A DNA stretch of 63,984 bases, the filler included, from Octopus bimaculoides (taxonomy: Eukaryota): assembly GCF_001194135.2 (NCBI RefSeq). It is 8 parts of 7 records of this genome, joined end to end, with 100 filler letters (N's around TTAATTAATTAA, not from the genome) between each part and the next. Parts side by side here need not be neighbours in the genome. Positions count along the whole stretch, not along the records: positions 38,694 to 52,404 come from NC_068984.1; 7 more parts are not named here. The stretch is one strand, 5' to 3'. This document shows positions 38,416 through 52,504 of the stretch, piece after piece; within the stretch, counting starts at the first letter, position 1, and every line of letters begins with the position of its first letter. The notes under the pieces are model-generated. The model worked only from the letters and a program-made list of their open reading frames with translations, made no database searches and was not told where the DNA came from. A program made the translations under genes and the position numbers.

Positions 38416-38729
38416 GAGGTTAGATTGAAAAAAAATTGTTCTGAGTCCCAAATGGGAAGACAAAAAATGTTTATCATGCAGCTTTGCAATAAGTTCCAAG
38501 TCGACAAATTATATCATTGTTTTGATGAAAATTATTCATTGCTCGAAAAATATTGTTCAAGTTTAATAAAATCTAATATGTACTCAATGCATGNNNNNNN
38601 NNNNNNNNNNNNNNNNNNNNNNNNNNNNNNNNNNNNNTTAATTAATTAANNNNNNNNNNNNNNNNNNNNNNNNNNNNNNNNNNNNNNNNNNNNATATATA
38701 TATATATGTATATATAAATATATGTTATT

Positions 38730-39941
38730 TTGAGAAAAATAAAATTAAAATGCTGTAAGACTTGCACTTGTCAAACTACAGGAACAGTGCAGTGTAACAG
38801 CGGTAAATGTGGCTGTTATTACAAACATTCACAATATCAAGAGGGTCAAAATTTCGCTGATGCTTGCAACACTTGCCGCTGTATAAACGGTCAAGTAGAT
38901 TGTACAACAAGAATCTGTCAATGTACATATCAAGGACGAACTTATAATATTGGCCAAAGATTTGGTGAATGTGACGAATGCCAATGTTTGTCTAGTGGCA
39001 CAGTCCACTGTTCTAACAAGCCATGCAAATGCATCTATAACGGAAATACCTATCGAATTGGTGAAAGATTTGCAAACGGCTGCAATACATGCACATGTAA
39101 AATCGATGGTAGTGTAGACTGCACTACAAATCCATGTACCTGTACTTACAATCATAGGGTTTATAATATTGGGCAGAAATTCGACGATGACTGCAATACT
39201 TGTACATGTAAACATAACGGTCAAGTTGAGTGCACATATAAAACGTGTCGATGTACACACAAAGGACAAACTTATAAAATTGGTCAGAGATTTCATGAAG
39301 ATTGTAACCAATGCCAATGTTTATCAACTGGATATGTTCAATGTACAACCAAAGTTTGCAAATGTACTTACAACAACCAGATTTACAATGTAGGTCAAAC
39401 ATTTAGACAGGGTTGTAATAGATGTACGTGCGAAGTGAACGGGAGAGTAAGCTGTACTAATAACCCATGTCAATGCTTTTACAATGGAAATACCTACCGA
39501 ATCGGAGATTCATTTAGAAAAGGCTGCAATACATGCACTTGTAAAATCGATGGTAGAGTAGAGTGCACAACAAATCTATGCACCTGCAATTACAACGGCA
39601 AGCATTACGACATTGGTTCTATATGGTTTAATGACTGAAACAAATGTCAGTGCACTTCTGGAGGAAGAGCGGTTTGTGAACAGAAACCATGCACGAAACC
39701 CTGTATACACAAAGGAAATACATATTCCGCTGGCCAAACATTTAAAGATGACTGCAACACCTGTAGATGCGGACAGTTTGGTCGAGTATCCTGTACTAAA
39801 CTGTACTGTCCCCCAACCACGTGCCAATATTACGGAAAAACTTACAAACAGGGACAAACATTTATGACTCAAGATAGATGCAATGTTTGTCGATGTTCAA
39901 ATGGAAATGTCAAGTGTACCAAATACGATTGTTATAAAGAG
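38730..39941 (+). CDS. Large exon of a cysteine-rich repeat protein: 10 complete + 1 partial six-Cys modules (half-VWC / pacifastin-like), with an in-frame TGA at 39636-39638
   Basis: Module consensus C-x-Y-x-G-x2-Y-x2-G-x2-F-x3-C-N-x-C-x-C-x3-4-G-x-V-x-C-T-x3-C, ~37 aa. The frame continues after the TGA (NKCQCTSGGRAVCEQKPC TKPCIHKGNTYSAGQTFKDDCNTCRCGQFGRVSCTKLYC PPTTCQYYGKTYKQGQTFMTQDRCNVCRCSNGNVKCTKYDC YKE) to a phase-0 donor GAG|GTGAGT at 39941/39942. The 5' end abuts an N-gap, so the true exon start and any signal-peptide exon are not visible. Confidence 0.85.
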
Positions 39942-40613
39942 GTGAGTAAAGTTTTCTATTAGTTTTGATCTCCCTAATATAACGTGTCTCATCCTTATAT
40001 AGTTAGTCATTGTAAACAGAGAAAATAACAAAGAATTGAATAATGTTTAGCATAAACATTGGAATGCACTCACTGTACTACACTATGTTACGTTATACTA
40101 CCAACAAAATGATACCAGTCATTTGGTTTCCATATTTATTTGGAGTAGCTCATTTTATTGACGCTAGCATTATCTTGAAGAATACTAATGTTCTTTTGAT
40201 TGTAAACATGAAATGTTGTATATATGCATTTATTTAATAATTCATATGAAAATTATTAACTTTCAATGTTTTGTCTAAATTTATTGCTACTTTTATGAAA
40301 TCGGTAGCATATCTTTCGCATTACATCATCATTTTAAGAACCGTTATGATACAGAATTGTAAATTTTACAATATATTGTCTCACGTTTCAGTATATAGTT
40401 CGTGAGCGAGAGAGTTTTTTTTTTTTATTATTGCACCCGGTGAAATATGTATACTTTGTTGTGACATAATGTGATATATATTTAATCTTTACACTTCTTG
40501 AAATAGAAATTTAACTTTATACTTAAGTCTATGTTATAATTTTAATCTTTATACAAAATATTTATGTCCAATCTTATAAATATATTAATTTCTTGTAACT
40601 TTATTCTTTTCAG

Positions 40614-40628
40614 AGTCGACATTACTGA
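40614..40628 (+). CDS. Putative last coding exon of the six-Cys repeat gene (SRHY-stop)
   Basis: Polypyrimidine tract and acceptor CTTTATTCTTTTCAG ending at 40613; in phase 0 it reads AGT CGA CAT TAC TGA. Confidence 0.65.
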   Translation, partial: SRHY

Positions 40629-40695
40629 TGAACAACAGTTAACTTATTTTTGATTAATTTTAATAATTGTAAATATTACAAACATAATATTTTTA

Positions 40696-40730
40696 AATAA
40701 AACCTATATTTACTGCACATTTTTGTTTGA
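40696..40730 (+). terminator. Polyadenylation signal with a downstream U/GU-rich element
   Basis: AATAAA at 40696-40701, followed by CACATTTTTGTTTG at about 40717-40730, roughly 70 nt after the stop. Confidence 0.55.
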
Positions 40731-41399
40731 TTTATAATTGTAAAAGTTATAAAAACGATTTTAGATAACTAAGTTATCTATTTGAATAGCCATGATGAAA
40801 AGCATTGCGATACTTCAATACTTGAATAATTTGTAGTGAAAGACCTAAATAGTAATTCATTTTAATTTTGGTACAAAGCCAGCAATGTTGAGAGAGGTGC
40901 AAATTGATTACATCGACACTAGTATGTGACTGATACTTTATTTGATCGAGTCGGAAAGGACGAATGACAAAGTTGGTTAAATTATTTCAGGATTGTTAAA
41001 AGAATTTTATTTTCGATAGTTAGAAAATTTCAAGTCGGGTGCTAGCGAATAAGAAAGGACATGTTTCATCAATAAATTAAAACAAAAGTAACCTCAACAA
41101 CTGCAAAAATAATTTCATGAAAAAGACAGGACTAAAGAGAATGAGAAATATCAATTTAGCTGGAAATGCATTATTCCAGATTAACTTGGAAATGATAAAC
41201 ATTGTGAATAAAAGATGGAACATAAGTCGTGTTTTCAATAATCCAGCTACACACACAAACACACGCACACACAGACACGCGCGCGCGCACATACACACAC
41301 ACATACACACACACAAACACATATATTCACACGCACACACTAACATACAGGGAAACACATCGGCATATTTATATATTGGTATGAATTTGTCGTCGTAAC

Positions 41400-41530
41400 A
41401 ACAGCAGTAGCAATGGCAGCAGCAACGGCAGCAGCAACGGCAGCAGCAACGGCAGCAGCAACCGCAGCAGCAATAGAAACAGCTGCAGCAGCATCAGCAT
41501 CAGCATCACTAGCAGTATTAGTAGTAGTAG
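41400..41530. repeat. (GCA)-derived 12-bp repeat GCAGCAGCAACG with flanking (GCA/GTA)n
   Basis: Directly visible. Confidence 0.9.
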
Positions 41531-41877
41531 TTATTTTATATGCCTAATGCAAAAATGAGAGTAATACAAAGTGAATAGAATGAATATAGGGTTCAGTTTG
41601 CGGAATTTAACATGATTTATTCCGAGTTACGTGAAGGGATGATCTTCGCATATATACATACATACATGCATGCATACACACATACATACATACATGCAGA
41701 CAGACAGACAAACAGACAGACAGACATGCATACATACAGATTACATATTTACGGGATGGCTGTTCACTCATGTCTCAGGATTGTCATTGACTATTGAATG
41801 CATCTTACACACGATCACGATTACTATTTTTGCCTGTTAAGCTTCTACACGTGTTTCGACGGACCAGAAAAACAAAT

Positions 41878-42387
41878 CTGTTTATAAGTACATCAGAATG
41901 TAGAAGCATATTCCGATATACTGCACTGTGTGTAGTCAAACCAACACTGGACTGGCAAATACGCAATCTATAATTATGAGCATAAAACAATCTATTGTCC
42001 GACTTCGTTGATGACTGTTTAGCTCATCTTTGGAACGACGTATATACCCACAAATAAACTTTGTTGAGGCAAGACACTTGACTAGTGGACCTCTGAGGGA
42101 AGCATGTGTTTCGGCAGACCACACAAACAAGGGCTGTTTATAAGTACATCAGTATGCAGAAGCATATTCCGATATACCGTACTGTTTAGTTAAACCACCA
42201 CTGGACTGTCAAACATTTCCACATCTTATTGCAAGTTTCGCAATCTATAATTATGAGCATAAAGTAATAAACTTTTGTCCGACTTCGTTGATGACTGATG
42301 AGCCCAGCATTGGAAAGTCGTATACGGCCACAAATAAACTTTGTTGAGGCAAGACATCATCAGACTAGTGGACTCCTGAGGGAAGCA
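41878..42387. repeat. Diverged ~256-bp tandem duplication (2 units)
   Basis: CTGTTTATAAGTACATCAG at 41878 and 42134; CGCAATCTATAATTATGAGCATAAA, TGTCCGACTTCGTTGATGACTG, CACAAATAAACTTTGTTGAGGCAAGACA and GAGGGAAGCA each occur twice, colinearly. Confidence 0.9.
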
Positions 42388-42693
42388 GTTGCTTTCTGAA
42401 GTCTTATGATATTTCATCATCTAAGGAGTAAGAATATTCATCATCTAAGGAGCAAGAAATGCTACCCAAGTAAACAAATTTGTCTACTATTTTCAGATCT
42501 GTTACTTCAGCTTACGTTTCCTGGGATAGTTTGGAGCATAAGGAGTCTCATACCCGGGCTAATGGCAAATTTCTATACCTTACAAGAAGCAAAAAATGAT
42601 TCACGAAAATTTGTGTGTCGTAAACAGAAAGTGCAGTAGATTTTCAGTCATTTATGTAATATCGCACGTTCGGATTTCTTTATTGCTCAACTG

Positions 42694-44055
42694 ATTTCTT
42701 TATTGCGGCATATAGCCTTAAAAAAGAGGGGACATTACAAGGACAGGCAACACAAAACGTGGGGTACAAAAAACGAATGATGAAATACGAAATGAAATAT
42801 TTAACAATGAAAGGATGTAATGACATACGAGCCCCTCAAAGCTCGCAGTTCCGTTTTACTGTTCTAATTATACATATTAATTATCAGTCTCTTTCGTCTG
42901 TTGTGTATTCCATGAGGTTCTCTAATTCCATCACATTGGGTAAACTGTCATATTGTATATATATCCCGGTAGGTCTGATTCTAGTTTCAAACAACTCCAT
43001 CAGTCTTTCCTTTCTCTCTTCCTCCAATAATACCGCTCTTTCATCAGGTTCGAACATCTCATAATTCAGTCCTCTCCCCCCCTTACTTTCTCCTTCCACT
43101 CATCCAACTTCTCTCTCGCTCTTTGCTCTTCGGTTTTTTCCTTCCTGCTTGTTGTTAGCTCTGTTTCTTGCGTTCGAATCTCCATACTCTCTTTTTCCAT
43201 TGTGACTTGTCTCTTTGACTCCGATTTTCTTTTCTTGGGACTCTGGCGCAGACTCCACTCTCGTTGTAACATATTGGTGGTTTCCCCTCCACCACGACTC
43301 TCAGTCGGATCTTATCGGGGAGCATCAACTCCTCCGCCATCTTATGTAGATCTGGCAGGGTTATGTGTATCAAAGCTTCGAGACCATAACCCGATCAGTT
43401 GATCTCCTTTGACTTCTCCACCTTTATTATATCTACCTCCTCCTCGCAGTTGTAGATGATGGCTGCCACCAGCCATGCTTCGTCAATCTCTGGGGGCACT
43501 CTCCCTATCCTAACTCTTACAGTAGGCCGGTAAGAGTGATCACTTTGTTGATCTCAAAGGCCTCGTAGCGTGCCTTTTTGCCTGCTTCTCGTTAACGAAG
43601 CGCACCTACACCGTGTCGTACTTCCTTCCTCTCGAGCAAAATGTTGTTACTTCTTTAATCTCTTATAAACATTCCTCAATTTCTTCGATTTCCGCTACTT
43701 CAATCTTTTTCGTTTCTATGTTAAATGTTCGGTAAACTATTCTTTTTTTCTCCGCTCTTTGTAACATGTCGGCTGGTGGTGTTAAGCGGAAGCAATCTCC
43801 CTCCTTCACAATTAGTCCATTGTATTCCATAAAATCTCTTCCTTCTGTCTCAACTTCCCTTAGCTGCAACATGTTGGGTGCCGGGCTTTTGGCCGCCACC
43901 GCAGCATAGCTGCCAGATTCCAGGCCCAACAATGGGTAGAAGAAACAAATTCAACAACAGTTCAATCAATAAATCCAACGAAACTATCAACAATTTCAAT
44001 AACAGCTTCAAAAATCAATTTTCACAACTCACCGCTCGTTGACCTCTACTCAACT
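42694..44055 (-). mobile_element. ORF1-only non-LTR element, unit A (disrupted ORF1, zinc knuckle deleted)
   Basis: T-rich 5'UTR. ORF pieces LLGLESGSYAAVAA...VKEGDCFRLTPP...EECL*EIKEVTTFCSRGRKYDTV, ALIHITLPD...RLRVVVEGKPPICY and EMFEPDERAVL...ELENLMEY*. The 3'UTR ends GCAATAAAGAAAT. No RT or APE sequence. Confidence 0.8.
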
Positions 44056-44060
44056 ACTAA

Positions 44061-45296
44061 CTTTATTTGGGCATAAAGCCCCAACATAGAAGAACATTAC
44101 AAGGACAGACAACACAAAACGTGAGGTACATATAATGAATGGTGAGTATGAATTGAATTATTTACAATGAAAGGAAGGAGATTGCCTACGGGTAACACCG
44201 CCAAAAGAAGCCACGCAACATGCGGAAAGGAAAATAATAGTGTATAGAACACTAAATGTTGAAACCAAGAAGATAGAGGTAGCGGCAACAGAAGAAATAG
44301 AAGAATATCTGACCCAAGTGAAGGAAATGACGACCTTCTACGCAAGAGGGAGAAAATACTGGGATCTTTTTTAAAACGGGGGCCACATCTTTCATTAATG
44401 TTTTACGTAGTTTTTGGTACCGAAAGACTTTCAAACTTCGTATACTTATCTATTTTGTGTTATAGAACAGAAAAATATTTTTGTATTCGAATTTATTTCA
44501 TGTAAAAAATTGTCTTATTTCGATAATTTCAACCAATCACTGACAAGTATTCAGTTGTTTACATTTACTCCTTTGGCTGATTAAGCGGTGTAAAGCGTAT
44601 TTAATTTCCATAGCTTCGTTTTGCTTTTTTCTTTTTAAATTTGCTGTTTTATCCTAACCCTAACCCTATCACCGATAGAATTGTTTCAGAATCGTTTGTT
44701 TATGTAGTCGGCACTTAATGTATATCGGCTGAATGGACGTCACTGATTGGTTGAAATTACAGAAATACGACAACTTTAACATAGAATAACTTAGGGATTT
44801 CTTTTTTTTTTAAGAAGACTAAGAGAAAAAGATGTTTTATATGACACATTCTACCAGTGTTCCAAGTTTCAAAGTGTTTCGTTAATGAAAAATGTGGCCC
44901 CCGTTTTAAAAAAGATCCAAATACTGGCTTCAACATTCAGCACTCCACACACCACTACTATCCCTTCCGCCCGCTGCGTGGCCTCCCTCGGCGGTGCCAC
45001 CCGAAGGCAATCTCCCTCCTTTACAATCACCCCCCCCTATGCTTCTTCACCTTGCTCATATGAATATCAACATCAGTCACTTGCATAGCGTCGGCAGACA
45101 GCCCCCACCGCCTACTGCCGCAGCGCAGCTGGCCGCTTTCACACCCAACACAGGGTAGTACAATAATTTTTTAAAAAACGTTCAGCAATAAATAATAACA
45201 ATATTCTTCAACAGTCTCCAACAATACTCAAACAATCGAACCCACCGCAATCAACGCCGAAAACACAAACGCAACTCTGAAGAACTCTGGTCAACT
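44061..45296 (-). mobile_element. ORF1-only element, unit B: 5' end and 3'UTR on - strand with an inverted internal ORF1 piece, interrupted by a MITE
   Basis: 3'UTR at 44061-44170 (-). Segment 44171-44360 reads on + KEGDCLRVTPPKEATQHAERKIIVYRTLNVETKKIEVAATEEIEEYLTQVKEMTTFYARGRKY. Segment 44927-45296 (-) encodes LGVKAASCAAAV...VKEGDCLRVAPPREATQRAE..LNVEA. Confidence 0.8.
44362..44918. mobile_element. 557-bp MITE with 37-bp TIRs and 8-bp TSD (Merlin-like; superfamily tentative)
   Basis: TIR GGATCTTTTTTAAAACGGGGGCCACAT(C/T)TTTCATTAA with one mismatch. TSD AAATACTG at 44354-44361 and 44919-44926. Internal inverted repeat TAATTTCAACCAATCA(C/G)TGAC at ~44524 and ~44738; central CCTAACCCTAACCCT. 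Confidence 0.92.
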
Positions 45297-45300
45297 ACTA

Positions 45301-47039
45301 TTTCTTTATTTGGCACTACGGCCACAACACAGAGGAGACACTACAAGGATAGGCACAACACTACAAGTACAGACACAATGGGGACAAAAAACATAAAACG
45401 AATGCAGTACAATTTGAACGTTTATATACACTATTTACAATCGTTCAATTTTTGCATTGTTTTTTTTCTTTATCATCTTTTTTTTCCTCTCTCTTTTTTT
45501 CCATGAAACACTTTTACTTTTTTTTCTCTTTTTTCTTGTTCCCTTTTTTACCTTTGTTTTTCCTTTTTTTTCTTTCAACAAAACAATTTTACTTACTGTT
45601 TTTTTTCTTTTTAATACCTCATGAAAGGCTCCAAGTCTTTTAGCTTAACTACTGGTGGTAGGTGTTCGAAATCCGCCAACACTCCGGGCGGGTCAATCCC
45701 GTCTCCGCACATGTCTTTCAGTCTCTTGTATGTGTCTTTATCGACCACAATGGCCTACCCGTGGGTAACCTCACTCTTATCATATGCTTGAATTTTAAAA
45801 TTTTCTTTCCGTCTCTTTGCTTTTTGCATATGTTACGAAATTCCATTTATTTTTTTCTCCAGGTTTTCTCTTTTCTTCTTCCACTTCTTGTACCTTTTCC
45901 TTTTCAACTGTGAACAATCTCTCCGTTTCACCCTCGTATAGTTGCACTCCTGAATCTTTTTCTTTCACTGGGACAACCGGCATCTTTAACACTATTTCCT
46001 CTTTCTGTAACTCCTCGCACACTTTTCCAATTACTTTTTCGCTTTCTTTCTCCACCACCCTTTTGTCTGCCTGCCTTCTGGTCGCAGCTTTCATGTCCAC
46101 CTCTTCTTTCTTCTTTTTCTGGTTCTCTGGCGGTGAGCTCGCTTTTCCACTTCTCCTTCTTTTTCNNNNNNNNNNCTTGTACTACCTGGTTCGCACTCTC
46201 CCGTTTCTCCCCACATGCAAAACATATAGGTGGCCTGCCCTCCACTATCACTCTCAATCTCAAGTCGTCGGGCAGCACTATCTCCTCAACAATTCGATTT
46301 AAGTCTTCTATTGTTGCTTGGATAGTGAGCTCAATTCCGTATCCCCAGTAATTAATTCTTTGTGTCCTTGTGGCCTTCAGTATCTTGGCCTCATCCTTCA
46401 TGTTGAACATTATGGCTGTCATCAGCCACGTCTCTTTTAGTTCTGGGGGTACTTTGCCTACTCGCACTCTGGCCAGACGTTTGCCACAGTACGAAGGCAA
46501 AAGCACCCACTCCTCTGATCTTATTGCCTCCGTCGAGTGTTTAATTGCTTCTTCCTCTGTCGCAAAGCGCACCTCCACGGTGGCATACTTCCTTCCTCTT
46601 GTTATAAAGATTTTTTTATGCTTTATAAACATTCTTCAATTTCCTCCACTGTCGCAATCTCTATATTTCTCGTTGTAATTTTCATTGTCTTGAATACAAC
46701 TGTTTTTTTTGTTACATTGCCTGTCAGTTCTGCAGGTGGCGTTAACTTTAACGTATCTCCAACTCTGTCCAGCAACCTCTCACATTCCTTCATTTTCTTT
46801 GGTTCTACCTTAATTTCAATTATTTCCAACGTTTCCTCTTCTATTCCTTTTCCAGTTGCGGCCGCATAACTGTGGCCACCCACTGGCATGTTCTCCATTT
46901 TTCTCCCAATGGGAAGAGAAGAAATAAAACAACAATTCCAACAGTAATAATTAACAAACAAATATTTAACGCTCTGACTTACGATAAAAACACTCCGTTA
47001 TCAATAACTCAAAAGACCTCTGCACAATTCTGCTCAACT
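45301..47039 (-). mobile_element. ORF1-only element, unit C (distinct subfamily, ATG start, knuckle half-deleted)
   Basis: MENMPVGGHSYAAATG...LKLTPPAE...EIEECL, then RGRKYATVEVRFATEEEAIKHS...RVRVGKVPPE..ETWLMTAIMFN...VLPDDLRLRVIVEGRPPICFACGEK|RESANQ. The 3' end reads GTGCCAAATAAAGAAA. Confidence 0.8.
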
Positions 47040-47040
47040 A

Positions 47041-47867
47041 TTTATCTTTATTATAGGCATATAGCCTGAACAAAGAATGGACACTACAAGGACAGACAAC
47101 ACAAAACGTGGGGTACATATAACGAATGATGAAAAATGAAATATTTATAATGGAAAAATGGAATGGCTTACGAGTCCCCCAAAACTCGCAGCTTCATTTT
47201 ACAGTTCTATTTATACTGATTGTTTTTAGTCATCATTTTCATTTGTTATATGCCCGGTTACGTCCTCTAACCCAATTACGTTCGGCAGATTTTCGTACTG
47301 AACATATATTTGAGCATTTATAATTTTATCAGGGAATAACTCTATCAACTTCTCCAGTCTATCCTTCTCCACCAGCACTGCTCTTTGATTGCCTCAAACA
47401 TCTCTGTGTTCAACTTTACTCTTATCAAAGCCTTGATCTTCACTATCTTTTTCTCTATTTCCATTTCTTTTTTGTAAAACATGAACGTTCTCAATTTACT
47501 CCCCTTCGGTCTTCCTGTTTTCACCACATGTTCTAATTGCTTCTCCAATCTTCCTTCCGACTTCATAATTTTCTGCATTCTTACTACATTTTCTATGTTG
47601 ATCTATGCTTTCTCGGGTTCTGAAGTTCTCTTCTCTGTATCTTTCTTTATTCTCAGCTGCATTCTTTTTCCCTTTCTTTTTCTTGGGGCTTTTTGGCGGT
47701 GAATCGACTCGTGCTCTCTTTCTCTCTGCCGCTGTTTCCTCCACCTTTTTTTCTATTTCCACCACTGCTTCTTCACTGACCACTGTTTCCTCCGTTAACC
47801 CCACCAGTTAATCTCTCGTGACTTTTCGACCTTTAGAACTTCCACTGCATCTTTAAAATGTAAAAAA
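47041..47867 (-). mobile_element. ORF1-only element, unit D (3' half; linker and knuckle deleted)
   Basis: KDAVEVLKVEKSREINWWG joined directly to LTEETVVSEEAVVE...RVDSPPKSPKKKK...IRVKLNTEMFE; 3'UTR homologous to A, B and F. Confidence 0.75.
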
Positions 47868-48322
47868 TGAACAATCTCTCCATTTCACCCTCGTATAGTT
47901 GCACTCCTGAATCTTTTTCCTTCACTGGGACAACCGGCGTCTTTAACACTGTTTCCTATTTCTGTATCTCCCTCTCGCACACTTTTCCCATTACTTTTTC
48001 ACTTTCTTTCTCCACTACCCTTTTGTCTGCCTTCCTTCTGGTCACAGCTTTCATTTCCACCTCTTCTTTCTTCTTTTTCTGGTTCTCTGGCGGTGGGCTC
48101 GCTTTTCCACTTCTTTTTCTTTCCACTACCGTGAATCCCTCCTCCACTGTTTCTTCTTCCATCTCCACTTGTACTACCTGGTTCGCACTCTCCCGTTTCT
48201 CCGTCTGTGATCTCTGTGGGCATCTCGTCTTCATGTGGCCTTTCTCCCCACATGCAAAACATATAGGTGGCCTGCTCTCCACTATCACTCTCAATCTCAA
48301 GTCGTCGGGCAGCACTATCTCC
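47868..48322 (-). mobile_element. C-subfamily ORF1 fragment (C') with an intact CCHC knuckle
   Basis: Near-identical to 45911-46285 but retains CFACGEKGHMKTRC (C-x2-C-x4-H-x4-C, 48220-48261). Confidence 0.85.
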
Positions 48323-49260
48323 TTCTTCTACCGCTTCTTCTTCACTCGCTACTACTTCCTCCATCTGTACTTCTCTTAGGGGACAATTTGCCTGCGTGTG
48401 TCCCCTACTTCTACATTTATAACATACAGGTGGTCTCCCCTCCACCACGACTCTCAGTCGGGTCTCATCGGGGAGTACCAACTCCTCCGCTATGTTGTGT
48501 TGATCTGGTAGCGTCACATGGATTAGACCTTCTAATCCCAAATCCCACCAGTTGATATCTCTCGACTTCTCAACTTTTATGACTTACACTTCGTCCTTAC
48601 AATTGAAAATGATGACTGCCACCAGCCATTCTTCGTTCATCTCCGGGGGCCCTCTGCCTATTCTTATTCTTGCGGCACGTCTCCCGCAGTAGATTGGCAA
48701 GAGTGCCCACCTTGTTGTTCTCAAGGCCATATTGGAGTGCTTTTTCGCTTCTTCTTCGCTCCTAAATTGCACCTCCACTGTGTCGTATTTCCTCCCTATT
48801 GTGTAGAAGGTTGTCTTGTCCTTCACTTGTGTCAGACATTCTTCTATGTCTTCCGTTGCCGCTACAGCAATTTTTTTGCTTTCAACGTTTAGTGTCCTGT
48901 ACATTATAATTTTCTTCTCTGCTCGTTGCGTGGCTTCTTTCGGAGCTGTCACCCTAAGGCAATCTCCCTCCTTCACAAATAATTTCTGATGTTTTATTAC
49001 TTTGTTTATGTCAATTTAAACTTTAGTCATCTGCATTGGGTCGGCAGACAGGCTTTTTGCCTACTGCCGCAGCGTAGCTGGCTGTTTCTTTACCCAACAA
49101 TGGGAACTATAACAATTTTCAAAATATTCAAAAAAGTCCAACAATAATAATTAATAATTTACTTTAACAATTTTCACCAACAAAAAATTCAACTCACCAC
49201 ACGCAACGCTCTCTTCCAACTAAAATCACAAACGCAAACTCTGAATAAGGATGGCCGACT
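48323..49260 (-). mobile_element. ORF1-only element, unit E (5' half with intact CCHC knuckle)
   Basis: LLGKETASYAAAVG...KEGDCLRVTAPKE...GRKYDTVEVQFRSEEEAKK...RIRIGRGPPEMNEEWLVAVIIFNC...RLRVVVEGRPPVCYKCRSRGHTQANC (knuckle at 48383-48424). Confidence 0.85.
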
Positions 49261-50639
49261 TCTTTCTTTATTAGGCACTACGGCCATAACATACAGGGGG
49301 ACACTACATGGACAGACAACACAAAACGTGCGGTACATAAAACGAATGATGAAATACGAAATGAAATATTTAACAAGGAAAAGATGCAATGGCTTACGAA
49401 CCCCACAAAGCTCGCTGTTCCACTTTACTGTTCCAATTATACATATTAATTATCAGTCTCTTTTGTCTGTTATATATTCCATGAGGTTCTCTAATTCCAT
49501 CACATTGGGAAAACCGTCACATTGTATATATATCCCGGTAGGCCTTATCTTTGCTCCAAATATCTCCTTTAACCTGTCTTTTCTTTCTTCATCCACTAGT
49601 ACCGCTCTTTCCTCTGGTTCGAACATCTCGTAATCCAGTTTAACTCTTATTATGTTTTTCATTTTAGTTAGTCTCTTTTCCACTTCTATATCCTTATCAT
49701 ATCCTATCATTGTTTTTATATATCTACCTGCATTCTGCCCTGTTCTTGCTACGTAATCCATTCTCCTCCTTACTTTCTCTTTCCACTGTTCTTCAGTTCC
49801 TTCCCCCCTGCTCGTTGTTGGCTCTGGTTCCCGCGTTCCAATCTCCATACTCTCCCCCTCCACTGTAACTTGTTTCCTTGTCTACGCCTTTCCTCCCTTG
49901 GGACTCCTTGGCGGAGACTCCACTCTCGTTCCCCTCCTGTCCGGCAGGGTTACGTGTATCAACGCTTCGAGACCAGAACCCCGCCTCCTTCGACCTCTCC
50001 ACCTCTATTATATCTTCCTCCTCCTCGCAGTTGCAGATGATGGCTGCCACCAGCCATGCTTCATCAATCTCTGATGGCACTCTCCCTATGCCAACTCTTG
50101 CGGCACGTCTCCTGCTGCAGGTCGGTAAGAGTGCCCACCTTGTTGGTCTCAAAGGCCTCGTGGCGCGCCTCGCCGCCTCTCCCTCGCTAACGAAACGCAC
50201 CTCCACCGTGCAGTACTTAATGTTGTAACTTCTTCAATCTCTTGTAAACATTTCTCAACTTCTTCGACCTCCGCCACTTCAGACTTTTTGGCTTCTATGT
50301 TAAATGTTCGGTATACTATTCTTTTTTTTCTCTCTGCCCCTTGCAACACGTCGGCTAGCGGTGTTAAGCGGAAGCAACCTCCCTCCTTCACAACTAGTCC
50401 ACTATATTCTTTAAAATCTCTTCCTTCCGTCTCAACTTGCCTTAGCTGCAACATGTTGGGTGCCGGTCTATCGCCCGCCACCGCAGCATAGCTGCCAGCT
50501 TCCCTGTCCAACAATGGGTAGAAAAAACAAATTCAACAATAGTTCAATTAACGATCCAACGACAATATCAACAATTTCAATAACAGTTTCAAAAATCAAT
50601 TTTCACAACTCATCGCTCGGAGACCTCGACGTCTAGACT
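49261..50639 (-). mobile_element. ORF1-only element, unit F (sister of unit A)
   Basis: The 5'UTR and ORF pieces (LLDREAGSYAAVAG..., IRVKLDYEMFEPEERAVL...ELENLMEY*) are colinear with unit A. The 3' end reads GTGCCTAATAAAGAAAGA. Confidence 0.85.
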
Positions 50640-51201
50640 TCTCCCTCTATATCTACGTATTGGGCTAGCCTACTTCACCGGCTGGGGACGTCAATACAAT
50701 AATTTGCAAATGGAGAAACCTTGAATGAAAAATTGAAAGACTTTTATCGAGTAGCTGGCGCGTGTGTATACTTATTGAAGCGCTTGGCTTTTACGCACAG
50801 TAATAGTCCTTGATATTATAACATATTTTATAATATAGAGAAAAAAATTAGATATCTTGTATTAATTTTTTTCCTTAATTGGTTTACACTCTGGCTACCC
50901 TATAAAATCGTATATGGATTTTATCCTTATATTTTATTTACAAATATTGAACCGGAATATATTCAGTAGAGAATTATTTCGATTATACACACGTGATGAG
51001 ATGAACTAGGCAGAGATGACTTTAATTGGATTTATAAGTGTAAACATTTATATATTTTCTACTGGATGCGTTGTGTTCGTTTGATATATACAGATGTTTA
51101 TATTGTTTATATATCTGTTTTTCCCGGTTATGTTCTTACTGATGAGTGGAGAACATGGTAATACATGATAACAAGAAATCATTAATGGCATACGACTAAA
51201 G

Positions 51202-51233
<32 letters not shown>

Positions 51234-51732
51234 NNNNNNNNNNNNNNNNNNNNNNNNNNNNNNNNNNNNNNNNNNNNNNNNNNNNNNNNNNNNNNNNNNN
51301 NNNNNNNNNNNNNNNNNNNNNNNNNNNNNNNNNNNNNNNNNNNNNNNNNNNNNNNNNNNNNNNNNNNNNNNNNNNNNNNNNNNNNNNNNNNNNNNNNNNN
51401 NNNNNNNNNNNNNNNNNNNNNNNNNNNNNNNNNNNNNNNNNNNNNNNNNNNNNNNNNNNNNNNNNNNNNNNNNNNNNNNNNNNNNNNNNNNNNNNNNNNN
51501 NNNNNNNNNNNNNNNNNNNNNNNNNNNNNNNNNNNNNNNNNNNNNNNNNNNNNNNNNNNNNNNNNNNNNNNNNNNNNNNNNNNNNNNNNNNNNNNNNNNN
51601 NNNNNNNNNNNNNNNNNNNNNNNNNNNNNNNNNNNNNNNNNNNNNNNNNNNNNNNNNNNNNNNNNNNNNNNNNNNNNNNNNNNNNNNNNNNNNNNNNNNN
51701 NNNNNNNATATATATATATATATATATATATA

Positions 51733-52284
51733 CAGTGTACATTTAAACACATAAGAGGTATCCATCATAGGACTATCTGCACGCTAGAGAGGACAGTTAA
51801 ATTCCAAATCACTATTCAGTACAGTGTACACTGTATTTATATGAATAATGTATAATCTATTGACTAAATTTTTACTCGCTAGGCCACTGGTAATGGAAAT
51901 TTCTAATATTTCAGATTACCTTTTTGATATTATTAAGTATTGATATTTTTTTTTTTTAATAATTTTCGAAAGGAAAAAGCCGGCATATTTATTTACTGCC
52001 GACAAGGAGCTGCGCTTGTGCGGTAGATTTGAAAAATTAGAATGTATAAGCACGAGGCATATACTGGATTGCCTCGTGTATATATATTTAATCTAGGGTG
52101 TACCTGCTGATGTAGGCTTCGCCTAGCAAATTATTTTACTTGCTAAAAAGGTTTGAAACCATTTGGTCCAGTGAGTTAGATGGTAAATGTTTTTATTTTT
52201 CATTCCCTTCTATATTTTATCCCTAATAGTGGTAGTGCAGGTAGTCCTATGAAAGAAACCTCTTATGTGTTTAAATGTACACTG
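51733..52284. mobile_element. Tc1/mariner-type MITE with ~52-bp TIRs and TA TSD
   Basis: Left TA|CAGTGTACATTTAAACACATAAGAGGTATCCATCATAGGACTATCTGCAC versus the reverse complement of the right end TA|CAGTGTACATTTAAACACATAAGAGGTTTCTTTCATAGGACTACCTGCAC. Confidence 0.85.
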
Positions 52285-52504
52285 TATTTATATGAATAAT
52301 ATATAGTCTATTGACTAAATTTTTACGCGCTAGGCCACTAGTAATGGAAATTTCTAATATTTCAGATTATCCTTTGATATTATTAATTATATATATGCAT
52401 ATATNNNNNNNNNNNNNNNNNNNNNNNNNNNNNNNNNNNNNNNNNNNNTTAATTAATTAANNNNNNNNNNNNNNNNNNNNNNNNNNNNNNNNNNNNNNNN
52501 NNNN

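What the first reader, a model, noticed from the sequence alone, without database searches (positions are those of the whole stretch)
42674..50640. 8-kb head-to-tail array of ORF1/Gag-only retroelements from several subfamilies
Seen: consecutive minus-strand units (A, B, C, D+C'+E, F; ~1.2-2.2 kb each). Each has a T-rich 5'UTR, one ORF1-like frame (SYAA N-terminus, RRM-like TVEV.F..EEEA, CCHC knuckle, acidic/basic tail) and a 3'UTR ending AATAAAG(A)AA that abuts the next unit's 5' end. There is no RT or endonuclease anywhere. The most similar units are non-adjacent (A~F, B~E, C~C'), which argues against simple tandem duplication. Known: ORF1-only non-autonomous elements exist (HAL1 from L1), Tx1-clade ORF1s have this SYAA/RRM/CCHC layout, and Drosophila HeT-A forms gag-only head-to-tail arrays. 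Inference: a family of ORF1-only elements, mobilised in trans, repeatedly inserts at one site and builds an interstitial array. I do not know of this being described in cephalopods.
Basis: partly seen in the sequence, partly recalled or inferred. Interest (0 to 1): 0.85.

Follow-up and report, generated by a model that had tools for sequence, protein, structure and literature searches.

The report
Tail-to-head cluster of ORF1-only octopus LINEs
This 8-kb stretch is a decayed chain of seven copies or fragments of an octopus jumping gene (an L1/Tx1-type LINE) that keep the RNA-binding gene ORF1 and the element's ends but lack the reverse-transcriptase gene, so it resembles mammalian "half-L1" elements, with the unusual habit of joining tail to head.

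Summary
The array is real. Seven minus-strand units or fragments lie at 42673-50630, in three subfamilies: A/F, B/E/D and C/C'. All are pseudogenes, and only E and C' keep an intact CCHC knuckle.

The protein is a LINE ORF1p, with two predicted RRM folds and a CCHC knuckle. Homologues are multicopy in Octopoda. In O. sinensis, O. vulgaris, Argonauta hians and one ENA assembly the homologous ORF1 is followed by an ORF2 with an APE endonuclease and a reverse transcriptase (plus zf-RVT in the three octopod loci), closest to human L1 ORF2p.

The window units run from the ORF1 stop straight into a ~190-nt 3'UTR. Its terminal motif matches the 3' end of those full-length elements. There is no ORF2.

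ORF1-only copies also occur elsewhere. One O. vulgaris copy has a target-site duplication. O. bimaculoides and a read-archive contig each show two ORF1-only units in series.

dN/dS between units is 0.2-0.4, so they come from distinct, once-functional source lineages and not from local duplication followed by decay.

Junctions join a 3' end directly to a 5' end, with no target duplication between them. Full-length relatives also form tandem arrays.

I infer, but have not shown, that reverse-transcriptase template jumping built the chain. The finding is a HAL1-like variant of moderate interest.

The parts
49266..50630 (-). Unit F (subfamily alpha, like A). It has a 5'UTR, ORF1 residues ~7-195, a deletion of the CCHC region, at least 2 frameshifts, the C-terminal domain (frame 49863-49453), a 3'UTR and a tail with AATAAAG at 49272-49266.
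48331..49265 (-). Unit E (subfamily beta). It has a 5'UTR and ORF1 residues ~1-250, with an intact CCHC (CYKCRSRGHTQANC), one stop and one frameshift. It is truncated at the 3' side at ...EEAVEEG, where C' begins.
47868..48330 (-). Fragment C' (subfamily gamma). It is an internal ORF1 piece, residues ~190-340, with an intact CCHC and neither head nor tail. It is 96% identical to the matching part of C.
47046..47867 (-). Unit D (subfamily beta). It is 5'-truncated at about residue 155, has the knuckle region deleted, and keeps the C-terminal part, 3'UTR and tail (AATAAAG at 47052-47046). It matches the C-terminal half of O. bimaculoides P0005 at 71%.
45304..47045 (-). Unit C (subfamily gamma). 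It is full length from head to tail. It has a frameshift near residue 90, a 45-nt deletion that removes half of the CCHC, the assembly gap at 46166-46175, an A/G-rich expansion after the stop, and a tail with AATAAAG at 45310-45304.
44061..45303 (-). Unit B (subfamily beta-like). Its head and the first ~67 ORF1 residues are followed by a rearrangement. This comprises a foldback element (44357-44923, 42-bp inverted ends) and an inverted ORF1 fragment (residues 25-100, plus strand, 44126-44359). Then comes the tail (AATAAAG at 44067-44061).
42693..44060 (-). Unit A (subfamily alpha). It is full length from head to tail, covers ORF1 residues ~4-233 with frameshifts, has a mutated knuckle, and keeps the C-terminal domain, 3'UTR and tail (AATAAAG at 42704-42698, then AAATC).
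42673..42692 (-). Terminal remnant after unit A. It consists of AGTTGAGC (the 5'-start motif of a unit) joined directly to a second AATAAAGAAATC (the 3'-end motif). Unrelated DNA follows.
   Evidence: unexplained, see full report
46166..46175 (.). Assembly gap of 10 N inside unit C. It stands for about 42 nt when compared with C' and L003, and the frame is continuous if that is the true length.

Best explanation
The interval is a decayed, interstitial, tail-to-head chain of non-autonomous ORF2-less copies of an Octopoda L1/Tx1-type LINE family.

Each complete unit keeps four parts: a T-rich 5'UTR starting AGTTGAGC... (inferred to hold the internal promoter); ORF1, which encodes two RRM folds, a CCHC knuckle, a charged linker and a small C-terminal domain; a ~190-nt 3'UTR; and the family's 3'-terminal motif, which ends 4-7 nt after AATAAAG with no poly(A).

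Shown:
- The units belong to three subfamilies that diverged under purifying selection on ORF1.
- All three share the same ORF1-stop-to-3'UTR architecture.
- Related ORF1-only copies are dispersed in octopus genomes, one of them with a target-site duplication.
- More distant family members carry an APE+RT ORF2 and the same 3' end.

Inferred:
- ORF1-only RNAs are reverse-transcribed in trans by the ORF2 protein of full-length relatives, which recognises the shared 3' end.
- The chain arose when the reverse transcriptase, on reaching the 5' end of one RNA, jumped to the 3' end of another. This would join 3' ends to 5' ends directly with no target duplication between them. Switches inside templates would explain the E/C'/D mosaic and the 20-nt remnant after A.
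- Later DNA-level events followed: the foldback insertion and inversion in B, deletions of the knuckle, and frameshifts.
For: Family identity:
- The closest proteins are O. bimaculoides CCHC proteins.
- An exhaustive phmmer search finds 346 clusters at 50% identity. All those looked up are octopod or unnamed Logan/ENA sequences, several inside chimeric gene models, which is typical of transposable-element fragments.
- A profile search finds clusters with up to 159 near-identical members.

LINE context:
- The homologous ORF1 is followed by an ORF2 with Exo_endo_phos and RVT_1 (plus zf-RVT in the three octopod loci) in Argonauta (L002), O. sinensis (L001), O. vulgaris (L005) and an ENA assembly (L008).
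- The best solved-structure match of that ORF2 is human L1 ORF2p, E 4e-42 over the full length.
- L002 has a perfect 16-bp target-site duplication, and L001 lies in (ATT)n.

ORF1p fold: the model has pLDDT >90 over residues 20-230, and Foldseek hits are tandem-RRM proteins. Pfam finds zf-CCHC.

ORF2-less architecture:
- No ORF2 similarity is found in the window, L003 or L004.
- The 3'UTR and tail of the units align with the post-ORF2 3'UTR of the full-length elements.
- L006 is an intact 379-aa ORF1 with the same tail, no ORF2 and a ~17-bp target-site duplication.
- L004 and L007 show further ORF1-only units in series.

Independent sources: dN/dS is 0.20 for C vs L003, 0.40 for A vs F, 0.20 for A vs E and 0.20 for E vs C, with an excess of third-position changes.

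Chain-forming habit: L005 has 2.8 tandem full-length copies at 99% identity. Their junctions differ by 3 mismatches and 3 indels within 23 nt. That points to junctions made by reverse transcription, not by DNA duplication.
Against: - No copy of subfamilies alpha, beta or gamma could be checked genome-wide, so a full-length (ORF2-bearing) member of these same subfamilies cannot be excluded.
- L003, the one solitary gamma copy, runs into an assembly gap right after ORF1.
- No target-site duplication is detectable around the whole array; 36% of shuffles score as well. A single-event origin is therefore unproven.
- C and C' are 96% identical while other pairs are at most 85%, so at least one local DNA-level duplication or conversion may have occurred.
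- The dN/dS segments were chosen where frames could be aligned, which biases the ratio downward.
- Template jumping is inferred from junction anatomy only.
Confidence: 0.8

Rival explanations
1. Stepwise insertion. ORF1-only elements, and their full-length relatives, insert preferentially right next to a resident copy, at its 5' or 3' boundary. The chain then grew one retrotransposition at a time, as HeT-A/TART arrays do and as in the 'double insertion' tandems described in Drosophila.
For: - Units come from different subfamilies with different degrees of truncation; D is 5'-truncated, the hallmark of separate TPRT events.
- Most Drosophila non-LTR families form tail-to-internal tandems through repeated insertion (PMC5932611).
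- Tail-to-head pairs recur at independent loci: L004, L005 and L007.
Against: - Double insertion should leave a copy of the target site in each junction. This family makes ~16-bp duplications, yet the junctions here run from the 3' end straight into the AGTTGAGC 5' start.
- Solitary copies have unrelated targets: (ATT)n, TCTTCAACTTATGTTT and GCTGGGTTCG.... There is thus no sign of sequence-specific targeting.
- C' has neither a head nor a tail, so it cannot be a normal insertion.
Confidence: 0.3
2. Local DNA duplication. A single ORF2-deleted LINE copy was amplified in place by unequal crossing-over or replication slippage, and the copies then diverged. No ORF1-only retrotransposition would be involved.
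For: - C and C' are 96% identical and lie 1.5 kb apart.
- All units share one orientation and one architecture.
- Arrays of repeats are prone to unequal exchange.
Against: - dN/dS of 0.2-0.4 between units that are all pseudogenes today does not fit neutral decay after duplication.
- The most similar units are non-adjacent and appear in mirrored order, alpha-beta-gamma-beta-gamma-beta-alpha.
- Gamma-type units lie on two other O. bimaculoides chromosomes.
- An ORF1-only relative has its own target-site duplication.
Confidence: 0.07
3. Host gene cluster. The units are members of a tandem family of domesticated gag/ORF1-derived genes, most of them now pseudogenes.
For: - Purifying selection acted on ORF1.
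- Intact 350-450-aa ORFs are annotated as genes in Octopus (P0001, P0006, P0008, P0040).
Against: - No unit in the window is intact.
- Units abut with no intergenic DNA.
- They end in the same terminal motif as full-length LINEs.
- A relative has a target-site duplication.
- 5'-truncated copies occur.
- Fragments sit inside unrelated gene models.
- Purifying selection on ORF1 is expected for active LINE lineages.
Confidence: 0.03
4. Assembly artefact. Repeat-rich reads were mis-joined into an artificial chain.
For: - A 10-N gap lies inside unit C, next to the only high-identity pair, C/C'.
- The piece also holds a 474-N gap at 51234-51707.
Against: - Apart from C/C', units differ by 15-35%, too much for collapse or mis-joining by similarity.
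- Four junctions are read through without gaps.
- Both sides of the gap are collinear with C' and L003.
- Equivalent junctions exist in independent assemblies: L004 and the long-read-based L005.
Confidence: 0.03

Closest known systems
HAL1 (half-L1) elements of mammals
   Same: Both are non-autonomous derivatives of an L1-superfamily LINE that keep ORF1 and the element's ends but lack ORF2, and both are mobilised in trans. HAL1 arose several times (PMC5753468, citing Bao & Jurka 2010). Here too, ORF1-only copies are seen in at least two deep ORF1 lineages: the window clade and P0040/L006.
   Different: The ORF1p here is type I (two RRM folds plus a CCHC knuckle), not the mammalian coiled-coil/RRM/CTD type II. 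The elements end without a poly(A) tail and are found joined tail to head. The host is a cephalopod. It is not a member of HAL1 proper.
L1/Tx1-type LINEs with type I ORF1p (Tx1 group; annotated as 'L1-Tx1' in Octopus vulgaris)
   Same: - Relatives carry an ORF2 with an APE endonuclease, a reverse transcriptase and a C-terminal zf-RVT, closest to L1 ORF2p.
- The RRM + CCHC ORF1p is described as typical of Tx1-like elements of non-mammalian animals (PMC5203782).
- O. vulgaris is reported to hold 13 recently active L1-Tx1 families (PMC13282606).
   Different: The window units have no ORF2. The three target sites seen are unrelated, unlike the sequence-specific targets that I recall as typical of many Tx1-group elements. 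Placement inside the Tx1 clade by RT phylogeny was not done.
HeT-A / TART / TAHRE arrays at Drosophila telomeres
   Same: A gag-only element (HeT-A) depends on the RT of relatives and forms head-to-tail arrays that mix element types and truncated copies (mentions the telomeric tandems; the rest is general knowledge).
   Different: HeT-A belongs to the Jockey clade. It attaches to chromosome ends and leaves oligo(A) at its junctions. Here the flanks are ordinary interstitial DNA (a Cys-rich gene exon 3 kb away, plus dispersed repeats), the junctions have no A-run, and the clade is L1-like.
Tandem TE dimers from double insertion (McGurk & Barbash 2018) and concatemers from R2 reverse-transcriptase template jumping
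   Same: Non-LTR elements commonly appear as tail-to-head or tail-to-internal tandems. End-to-end template jumping by a LINE RT yields direct 3'-to-5' joins; this is known for R2 from general knowledge, and the term appears in PMC11371274.
   Different: Double insertion predicts a target duplication in each junction, which is not seen here. Template jumping has not been demonstrated for this family or for L1-type enzymes in this setting.

Membership tests
L1-superfamily LINE (autonomous) | An ORF2 encoding an APE-type endonuclease and a reverse transcriptase | tested here: not met
   TBLASTN with the family's own ORF2 (L002, L001) finds nothing in the window at E<=0.01. The interval is fully accounted for by ORF1 units. 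The feature is met in relatives L001, L002, L005 and L008, with human L1 ORF2p as the best solved-structure match.
L1-superfamily LINE (autonomous) | Target-site duplications and 5' truncation, the footprints of TPRT | tested here: met
   This was met in relatives only. L002 has a perfect 16-bp duplication, L001 lies in (ATT)n, and L006 has a ~17-bp duplication. 5'-truncated units are D in the window and the upstream unit of L004. No duplication is detectable around the window array itself.
Type I ORF1p (Khazina & Weichenrieder classes, as summarised in PMC5203782) | At least one RRM plus a CCHC zinc knuckle | tested here: met
   The AlphaFold model of P0001 shows two beta-alpha-beta-beta-alpha-beta units, and Foldseek hits are tandem-RRM proteins at E ~6e-5, probability 1.0. 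Pfam zf-CCHC is found in E and C'. Pfam RRM models do not match by sequence.
Tx1 clade | Placement in the Tx1 group by RT phylogeny | not tested
   Only domain content and the best PDB match were examined. A published O. vulgaris annotation lists L1-Tx1 families, but its library could not be compared.
Tx1 clade | Sequence-specific target sites (a feature of many members, from general knowledge) | tested here: not met
   The three resolved insertions have unrelated target duplications.
HAL1-like ORF1-only non-autonomous LINE derivative | ORF1 retained, ORF2 absent, and termini shared with an autonomous relative | tested here: met
   The ORF1 stop runs directly into a 3'UTR that aligns with the post-ORF2 3'UTR and terminal motif of L005, L002 and L001. 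The architecture is the same in subfamilies alpha, beta and gamma.
HAL1-like ORF1-only non-autonomous LINE derivative | Dispersed copies mobilised on their own, each with its own target duplication | tested here: inconclusive
   This is met for the related lineage in L006. For the window's own subfamilies, dispersed gamma copies exist (L003, L004), but their 3' flank or 5' end is hidden by gaps or truncation. No genome-wide search was possible.
HAL1 proper (mammalian) | Derived from mammalian L1 with a Transposase_22 (type II) ORF1p and a poly(A) tail | tested here: not met
   There is no Transposase_22 hit, the ORF1p is type I, and the elements end 4-7 nt after AATAAAG without an A-run.
HeT-A-type telomeric array | Attachment to chromosome ends, oligo(A) at junctions, Jockey-clade gag | tested here: not met
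   The flanks are interstitial sequence holding a gene exon and dispersed repeats. The junctions lack A-runs. The linked ORF2 is L1-like. The chromosomal position of the piece is unknown.
Tandem duplication / satellite-like array | Neighbouring units are the most similar, and divergence after duplication is neutral | tested here: not met
   The most similar units are non-adjacent, and dN/dS is 0.2-0.4. The exception is C/C' at 96%.

The most novel reading that the evidence does not exclude
An octopod L1/Tx1-type LINE family routinely builds heterogeneous concatemers in single integration events. Its reverse transcriptase would jump from the 5' end of one RNA to the 3' end of another, producing interstitial HeT-A-like chains. 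A long-lived ORF1-only lineage (subfamilies alpha, beta and gamma, all sharing one ORF2 deletion and kept under purifying selection on ORF1) would parasitise this machinery. If so, it would be a natural, genome-scale record of LINE template jumping, and an ORF1-dependent non-autonomous lineage outside mammals and Drosophila.
Probability: 0.3. Interest if true: 0.65.

Novelty: new variant of a known kind. Interest (0 to 1): 0.45.

Why it matters
ORF1-only LINE derivatives are well documented only in mammals (HAL1) and Drosophila (HeT-A). They bear on an open question: does ORF1p act in cis on its own RNA strongly enough for an ORF2-less element to compete for a partner's ORF2p?

Here an ORF1-only lineage with a type I ORF1p (RRM + CCHC) appears to have diversified into subfamilies under purifying selection in octopuses. 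In these genomes LINE activity has drawn interest because of its expression in the brain.

The direct 3'-to-5' joins, seen for both ORF1-only and full-length copies, offer natural material for asking whether L1-type reverse transcriptases jump between templates in vivo. They also show one way retroelements can seed tandem arrays.

On the practical side, several annotated 'CCHC-type domain-containing' or 'uncharacterized' Octopus genes are copies of this element. Chimeric gene models contain its fragments.

Tried and rejected
- Composite, frameshift-corrected proteins could not be used for the exhaustive search. An alignment of exact fragments was too gappy for a profile, so P0001 alone was used.
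- P0001, P0002 and P0129 have no contig on record.
- I tried to reach the orthologous locus through the neighbouring Cys-rich gene. There is no exact record, and the homology search returned only bivalve and metagenome relatives. The age of the array could therefore not be checked by synteny.
- A phage-collection BLASTN was a pointless negative.
- A PDB sequence search with P0001 gave only retroviral nucleocapsid knuckles at non-significant E-values; the fold comparison was needed.
- I considered a 3'-terminal hairpin (GGC-loop-GCC, with GCC/GGC and CCC/GGG variants in full-length relatives, plus a possible outer stem between CTTTGTT and AATAAAG). Single-sequence folding is no better than shuffles in about half the cases. 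MAFFT did not place the arms in register for a pair count. It remains a lead only.
- A target duplication around the whole array was sought and not found.
- The NJ tree of ORF1 cores has no bootstrap support, because the first attempt timed out. I use it only as a hint.
- L003 could not show what follows ORF1, because an assembly gap starts 50 nt after the stop.

Full report
**1. What is in the sequence**

Only 38694-52404 is genome. Self-comparison shows related segments on one strand between ~42.7 and ~50.6 kb. TBLASTN with the closest database protein (P0001, Octopus bimaculoides A0A0L8HDN2, 352 aa, 'CCHC-type domain-containing protein') maps the pieces on the minus strand:

| Unit | Coordinates | P0001 residues covered | Notes |
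|---|---|---|---|
| F | 50630-49266 | 7-195 | |
| E | 49265-48331 | 18-234 | |
| C' | 48330-47868 | 190-232 and onward | |
| D | 47867-47046 | from ~155 | |
| C | 47045-45304 | 4-219 | |
| B | 45303-44061 | 37-67 | also an inverted fragment, residues 25-100, plus strand, 44126-44359 |
| A | 44060-42693 | 4-233 | |

Every frame is broken. Only E and C' keep a full C-X2-C-X4-H-X4-C knuckle, which Pfam zf-CCHC detects.

The five tails align over ~190 nt and end in ...GTCCCCTCTnTGTTnnGGC-loop-GCC-AATAAAG plus 4-7 nt. After that the next unit begins with AGTTGAGCAG or a variant. Upstream of F is unrelated AT-rich DNA.

After A comes a 20-nt remnant (42673-42692), AGTTGAGC + AATAAAGAAATC, and then unrelated DNA.

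**2. The assembly gap**

C and C' are 96% identical in ungapped columns, 351 of 366. Relative to C', unit C has a 45-nt deletion flanked by GGAGAAA, which removes the GHxxxxC half of the knuckle. The 10 N replace about 42 nt.

With 42 nt the frame upstream (…PPICFACGEK…ANQVVQ) continues into the frame downstream (…SGKASSPPENQKKKK…). The O. bimaculoides copy L003 is collinear across the same point. The join is therefore plausible and in frame, but its length is unknown.

**3. What the protein is**

An exhaustive phmmer search with P0001 finds 346 clusters (at 50% identity) with E<=1e-3. Those looked up come from O. bimaculoides, O. sinensis, O. vulgaris and Argonauta hians, or are unnamed Logan/ENA contigs. 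Some are fused into WD40 or LDL-receptor gene models, which is typical of transposable-element fragments swept into gene predictions. A profile search finds clusters with up to 159 near-identical members.

An AlphaFold model of P0001 with a 40-sequence alignment is confident over residues 20-230. It shows two consecutive beta-alpha-beta-beta-alpha-beta units followed by the knuckle. Foldseek against the PDB returns tandem-RRM proteins such as U2AF65, IMP3 RRM12 and NONO/PSPC1, with E from 6e-5 and probability 1.0.

This is the type I ORF1p layout, RRM + CCHC. The literature describes it for plant L1s and for Tx1-like elements of non-mammalian animals (PMC5203782).

**4. The family includes ordinary full-length LINEs**

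- **Argonauta hians (L002).** The homologous ORF1 (527 aa) is followed 39 nt later by an 812-aa ORF with Exo_endo_phos and RVT_1, and then by a zf-RVT ORF. The 5.4-kb element is flanked by a perfect 16-bp duplication, TCTTCAACTTATGTTT.
- **O. sinensis (L001).** The same arrangement is present but broken, and it sits in an (ATT)n microsatellite.
- **O. vulgaris (L005).** There are 2.8 tandem full-length copies (ORF1+ORF2) with a period of ~5.28 kb and 99% identity, ending in an assembly gap.
- **An ENA assembly (L008).** It again has ORF1 followed by an APE+RT ORF2.

The best solved-structure match of the ORF2 is human L1 ORF2p, E 4e-42 over its full length, well ahead of R2. A 2026 annotation of O. 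vulgaris lists 13 recently active 'L1-Tx1' families (PMC13282606). It says nothing on ORF1-only forms or arrays.

**5. The window units are ORF2-less derivatives**

TBLASTN with the family's ORF2 finds nothing in the window, L003 or L004. In A, D, F and C the ORF1 stop codon is followed directly by the 3'UTR. That 3'UTR aligns with the 3'UTR after ORF2 in L005, L002 and L001. Shared blocks include GGGGCTCGT, CATTCGTTTT and the terminal GTCCCCTCTnTGTT…GGCC…AATAAA.

All resolved elements end 4-7 nt after AATAAAG with no poly(A). Subfamilies alpha, beta and gamma share the same stop-to-3'UTR join, so the loss of ORF2 most likely predates their split.

**6. ORF1-only copies elsewhere**

- **L006 (O. 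vulgaris).** An intact 379-aa ORF1 (P0040) with the family tail and no ORF2 within 10 kb. It is flanked by GCTGGGTTCG[T/G]CTA[G]CTC on both sides. This is the footprint of an ORF1-only RNA inserted by target-primed reverse transcription.
- **L003 (O. bimaculoides, another chromosome).** A solitary gamma-type unit that starts with the same AGTTTGAGCC motif. Its 3' side falls into a gap.
- **L004 (a third chromosome).** A 5'-truncated gamma-type unit whose tail (…TAATAAAGAAAAC) abuts the GTTGAGCGGCAG head of a second gamma-type unit.
- **L007 (a Logan contig).** An ORF1, a tail with AATAAAG, and then another ORF1 fragment ~380 nt further on, with no ORF2.

**7. The units come from separate functional sources**

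Codon alignments of in-frame segments give the following values (Nei-Gojobori method, bootstrap over codons):

| Pair | Codons | dN/dS | 95% bootstrap range |
|---|---|---|---|
| C vs L003 | 301 | 0.20 | 0.14-0.28 |
| A vs F | 185 | 0.40 | 0.25-0.69 |
| A vs E | 116 | 0.20 | 0.09-0.34 |
| E vs C | 169 | 0.20 | 0.10-0.38 |

There is a clear excess of third-position differences. All window copies are dead, so most of their divergence accrued in lineages with a working ORF1. This argues against in-place duplication followed by decay. My choice of alignable segments biases the ratios downward, but the codon-position pattern is robust.

An NJ tree places the window units with P0001, P0004, P0006 and L003 in one clade, and the ORF1s linked to an ORF2 elsewhere. 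It has no bootstrap support and is only a hint.

**8. How the chain formed (inferred)**

- Repeated insertion at one target should leave a target duplication in each junction (PMC5932611). This family makes ~16-bp duplications, yet the junctions run from the 3' end straight into the 5' start.
- The three resolved targets are unrelated, so I see no site specificity.
- In L005 the units are 99% identical, but the two junctions differ by 3 mismatches and 3 indels in 23 nt. That fits junctions made by reverse transcription, not copied as DNA.
- The E/C'/D block is a mosaic. E stops at …EEAVEEG. C', an internal piece of a gamma unit, runs from residue ~190 to ~340. D then resumes at residue ~155 of a beta unit. 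The remnant after A joins a 5' start to a 3' end.

These features are most simply read as a reverse transcriptase moving between RNA templates, at their ends and sometimes inside them, during one or a few integration events. Such jumping is known for the R2 enzyme (general knowledge). I have no direct evidence for it here.

Stepwise insertion next to a resident copy remains a serious alternative. Local DNA recombination probably contributed too, as the 96% identity of C and C' and the inversion in B suggest. No target duplication is detectable around the whole array.

**9. Comparison with known systems**

The closest kind is HAL1, the ORF1-only derivative of mammalian L1, which arose several times (PMC5753468). 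The present elements work like HAL1 but are not members of it. They have a type I ORF1p, no poly(A) and a cephalopod host.

They resemble HeT-A in being gag-only and chained. However, they are L1-like, interstitial and lack A-runs at their junctions.

My library searches found no description of ORF1-only LINE derivatives or LINE chains in cephalopods. Repbase and Dfam could not be consulted.

**10. Verdict**

It is an ORF2-less derivative of an ordinary octopod L1/Tx1-type LINE family. Tail-to-head chaining is a trait of the whole family, not of the ORF1-only elements alone. I class it as a new variant of a known kind, of moderate interest.

Noticed in passing
window 38730-39638 (+), cut by the piece's left edge: A 302-aa open frame made of about eight Cys-rich repeats of ~37 aa (CxCxYxGxxYxxGxxFxxxCNxCxCxxxGxVxC). 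The best homologues are bivalve 'kielin/chordin-like' proteins at 42% identity, carrying Pfam PF05375, PF23334 and PF00093 (VWC). No octopus orthologue was returned. It is probably an exon of a secreted Cys-rich protein gene 3 kb from the array.
   Followed up: partly
window 44357-44923 (inside unit B): A 567-bp foldback element with 42-bp inverted ends (93% complementary) and a second inner inverted pair (44506-44554 / 44729-44777). A related sequence lies in O. sinensis locus L001 at 9118-9207 (81%), so it is a dispersed MITE-like repeat. The ORF1 pieces on its two sides are inverted relative to each other.
   Followed up: partly
window 41848-42387: Two tandem copies of a ~255-285-bp repeat at 78% identity lie just downstream of the array. 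Their nature is unknown.
   Followed up: no
window 51708-52396, on both sides of the 474-N gap at 51234-51707: Copies of a short dispersed repeat: 51825-51946 vs 52276-52396 at 92%, with inverted matches at 51711-51782. The repeat is also present in O. bimaculoides loci L003 (1146-1382) and L004 (15329-15512) at 72-83%. It is SINE-like. (TA)n runs border the gap.
   Followed up: no
window 41249-41738: A run of microsatellites: (AC)46, a (CAG/CAA)-type 12-nt repeat at 41399-41508, and (CATA)22.
   Followed up: no
L005 4438-19184 (O. vulgaris OX597840.1, about 31.86-31.88 Mb): 2.8 tandem full-length LINE copies (ORF1 + APE/RT ORF2) with a 5.28-kb period and 99% identity, ending in a 100-N gap. 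The ORF1 is annotated in GenBank as 'EPM2A-interacting 1-like', which looks like a mis-annotation of a transposon protein.
   Followed up: partly
window 42673-42692: Right after the last unit, the 5'-start motif AGTTGAGC is joined to a second copy of the 3'-end motif AATAAAGAAATC. It could be an abortive template switch, a unit with nearly everything deleted, or a 12-bp duplication around an 8-nt insert. It is not resolved.
   Followed up: partly
L002 1321-4061 (Argonauta hians): ORFs with DUF1759 and DUF1758 (a putative peptidase) lie upstream of the LINE. By my recollection these are typical of a BEL/Pao-type LTR retrotransposon. They are unrelated to the finding.
   Followed up: no
3' ends of all units and of L001, L002, L004, L005, L006: A small GC hairpin sits just before AATAAAG. 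It is GGC-loop-GCC in the ORF1-only units, GCC-CTTGT-GGC in L001 and L002, and CCC-CTTGT-GGG in L005, so it varies by changes on both arms. An outer stem may form between CTTTGTT and AATAAAG. This is a possible RT recognition structure, but the folding energies are not convincing.
   Followed up: partly
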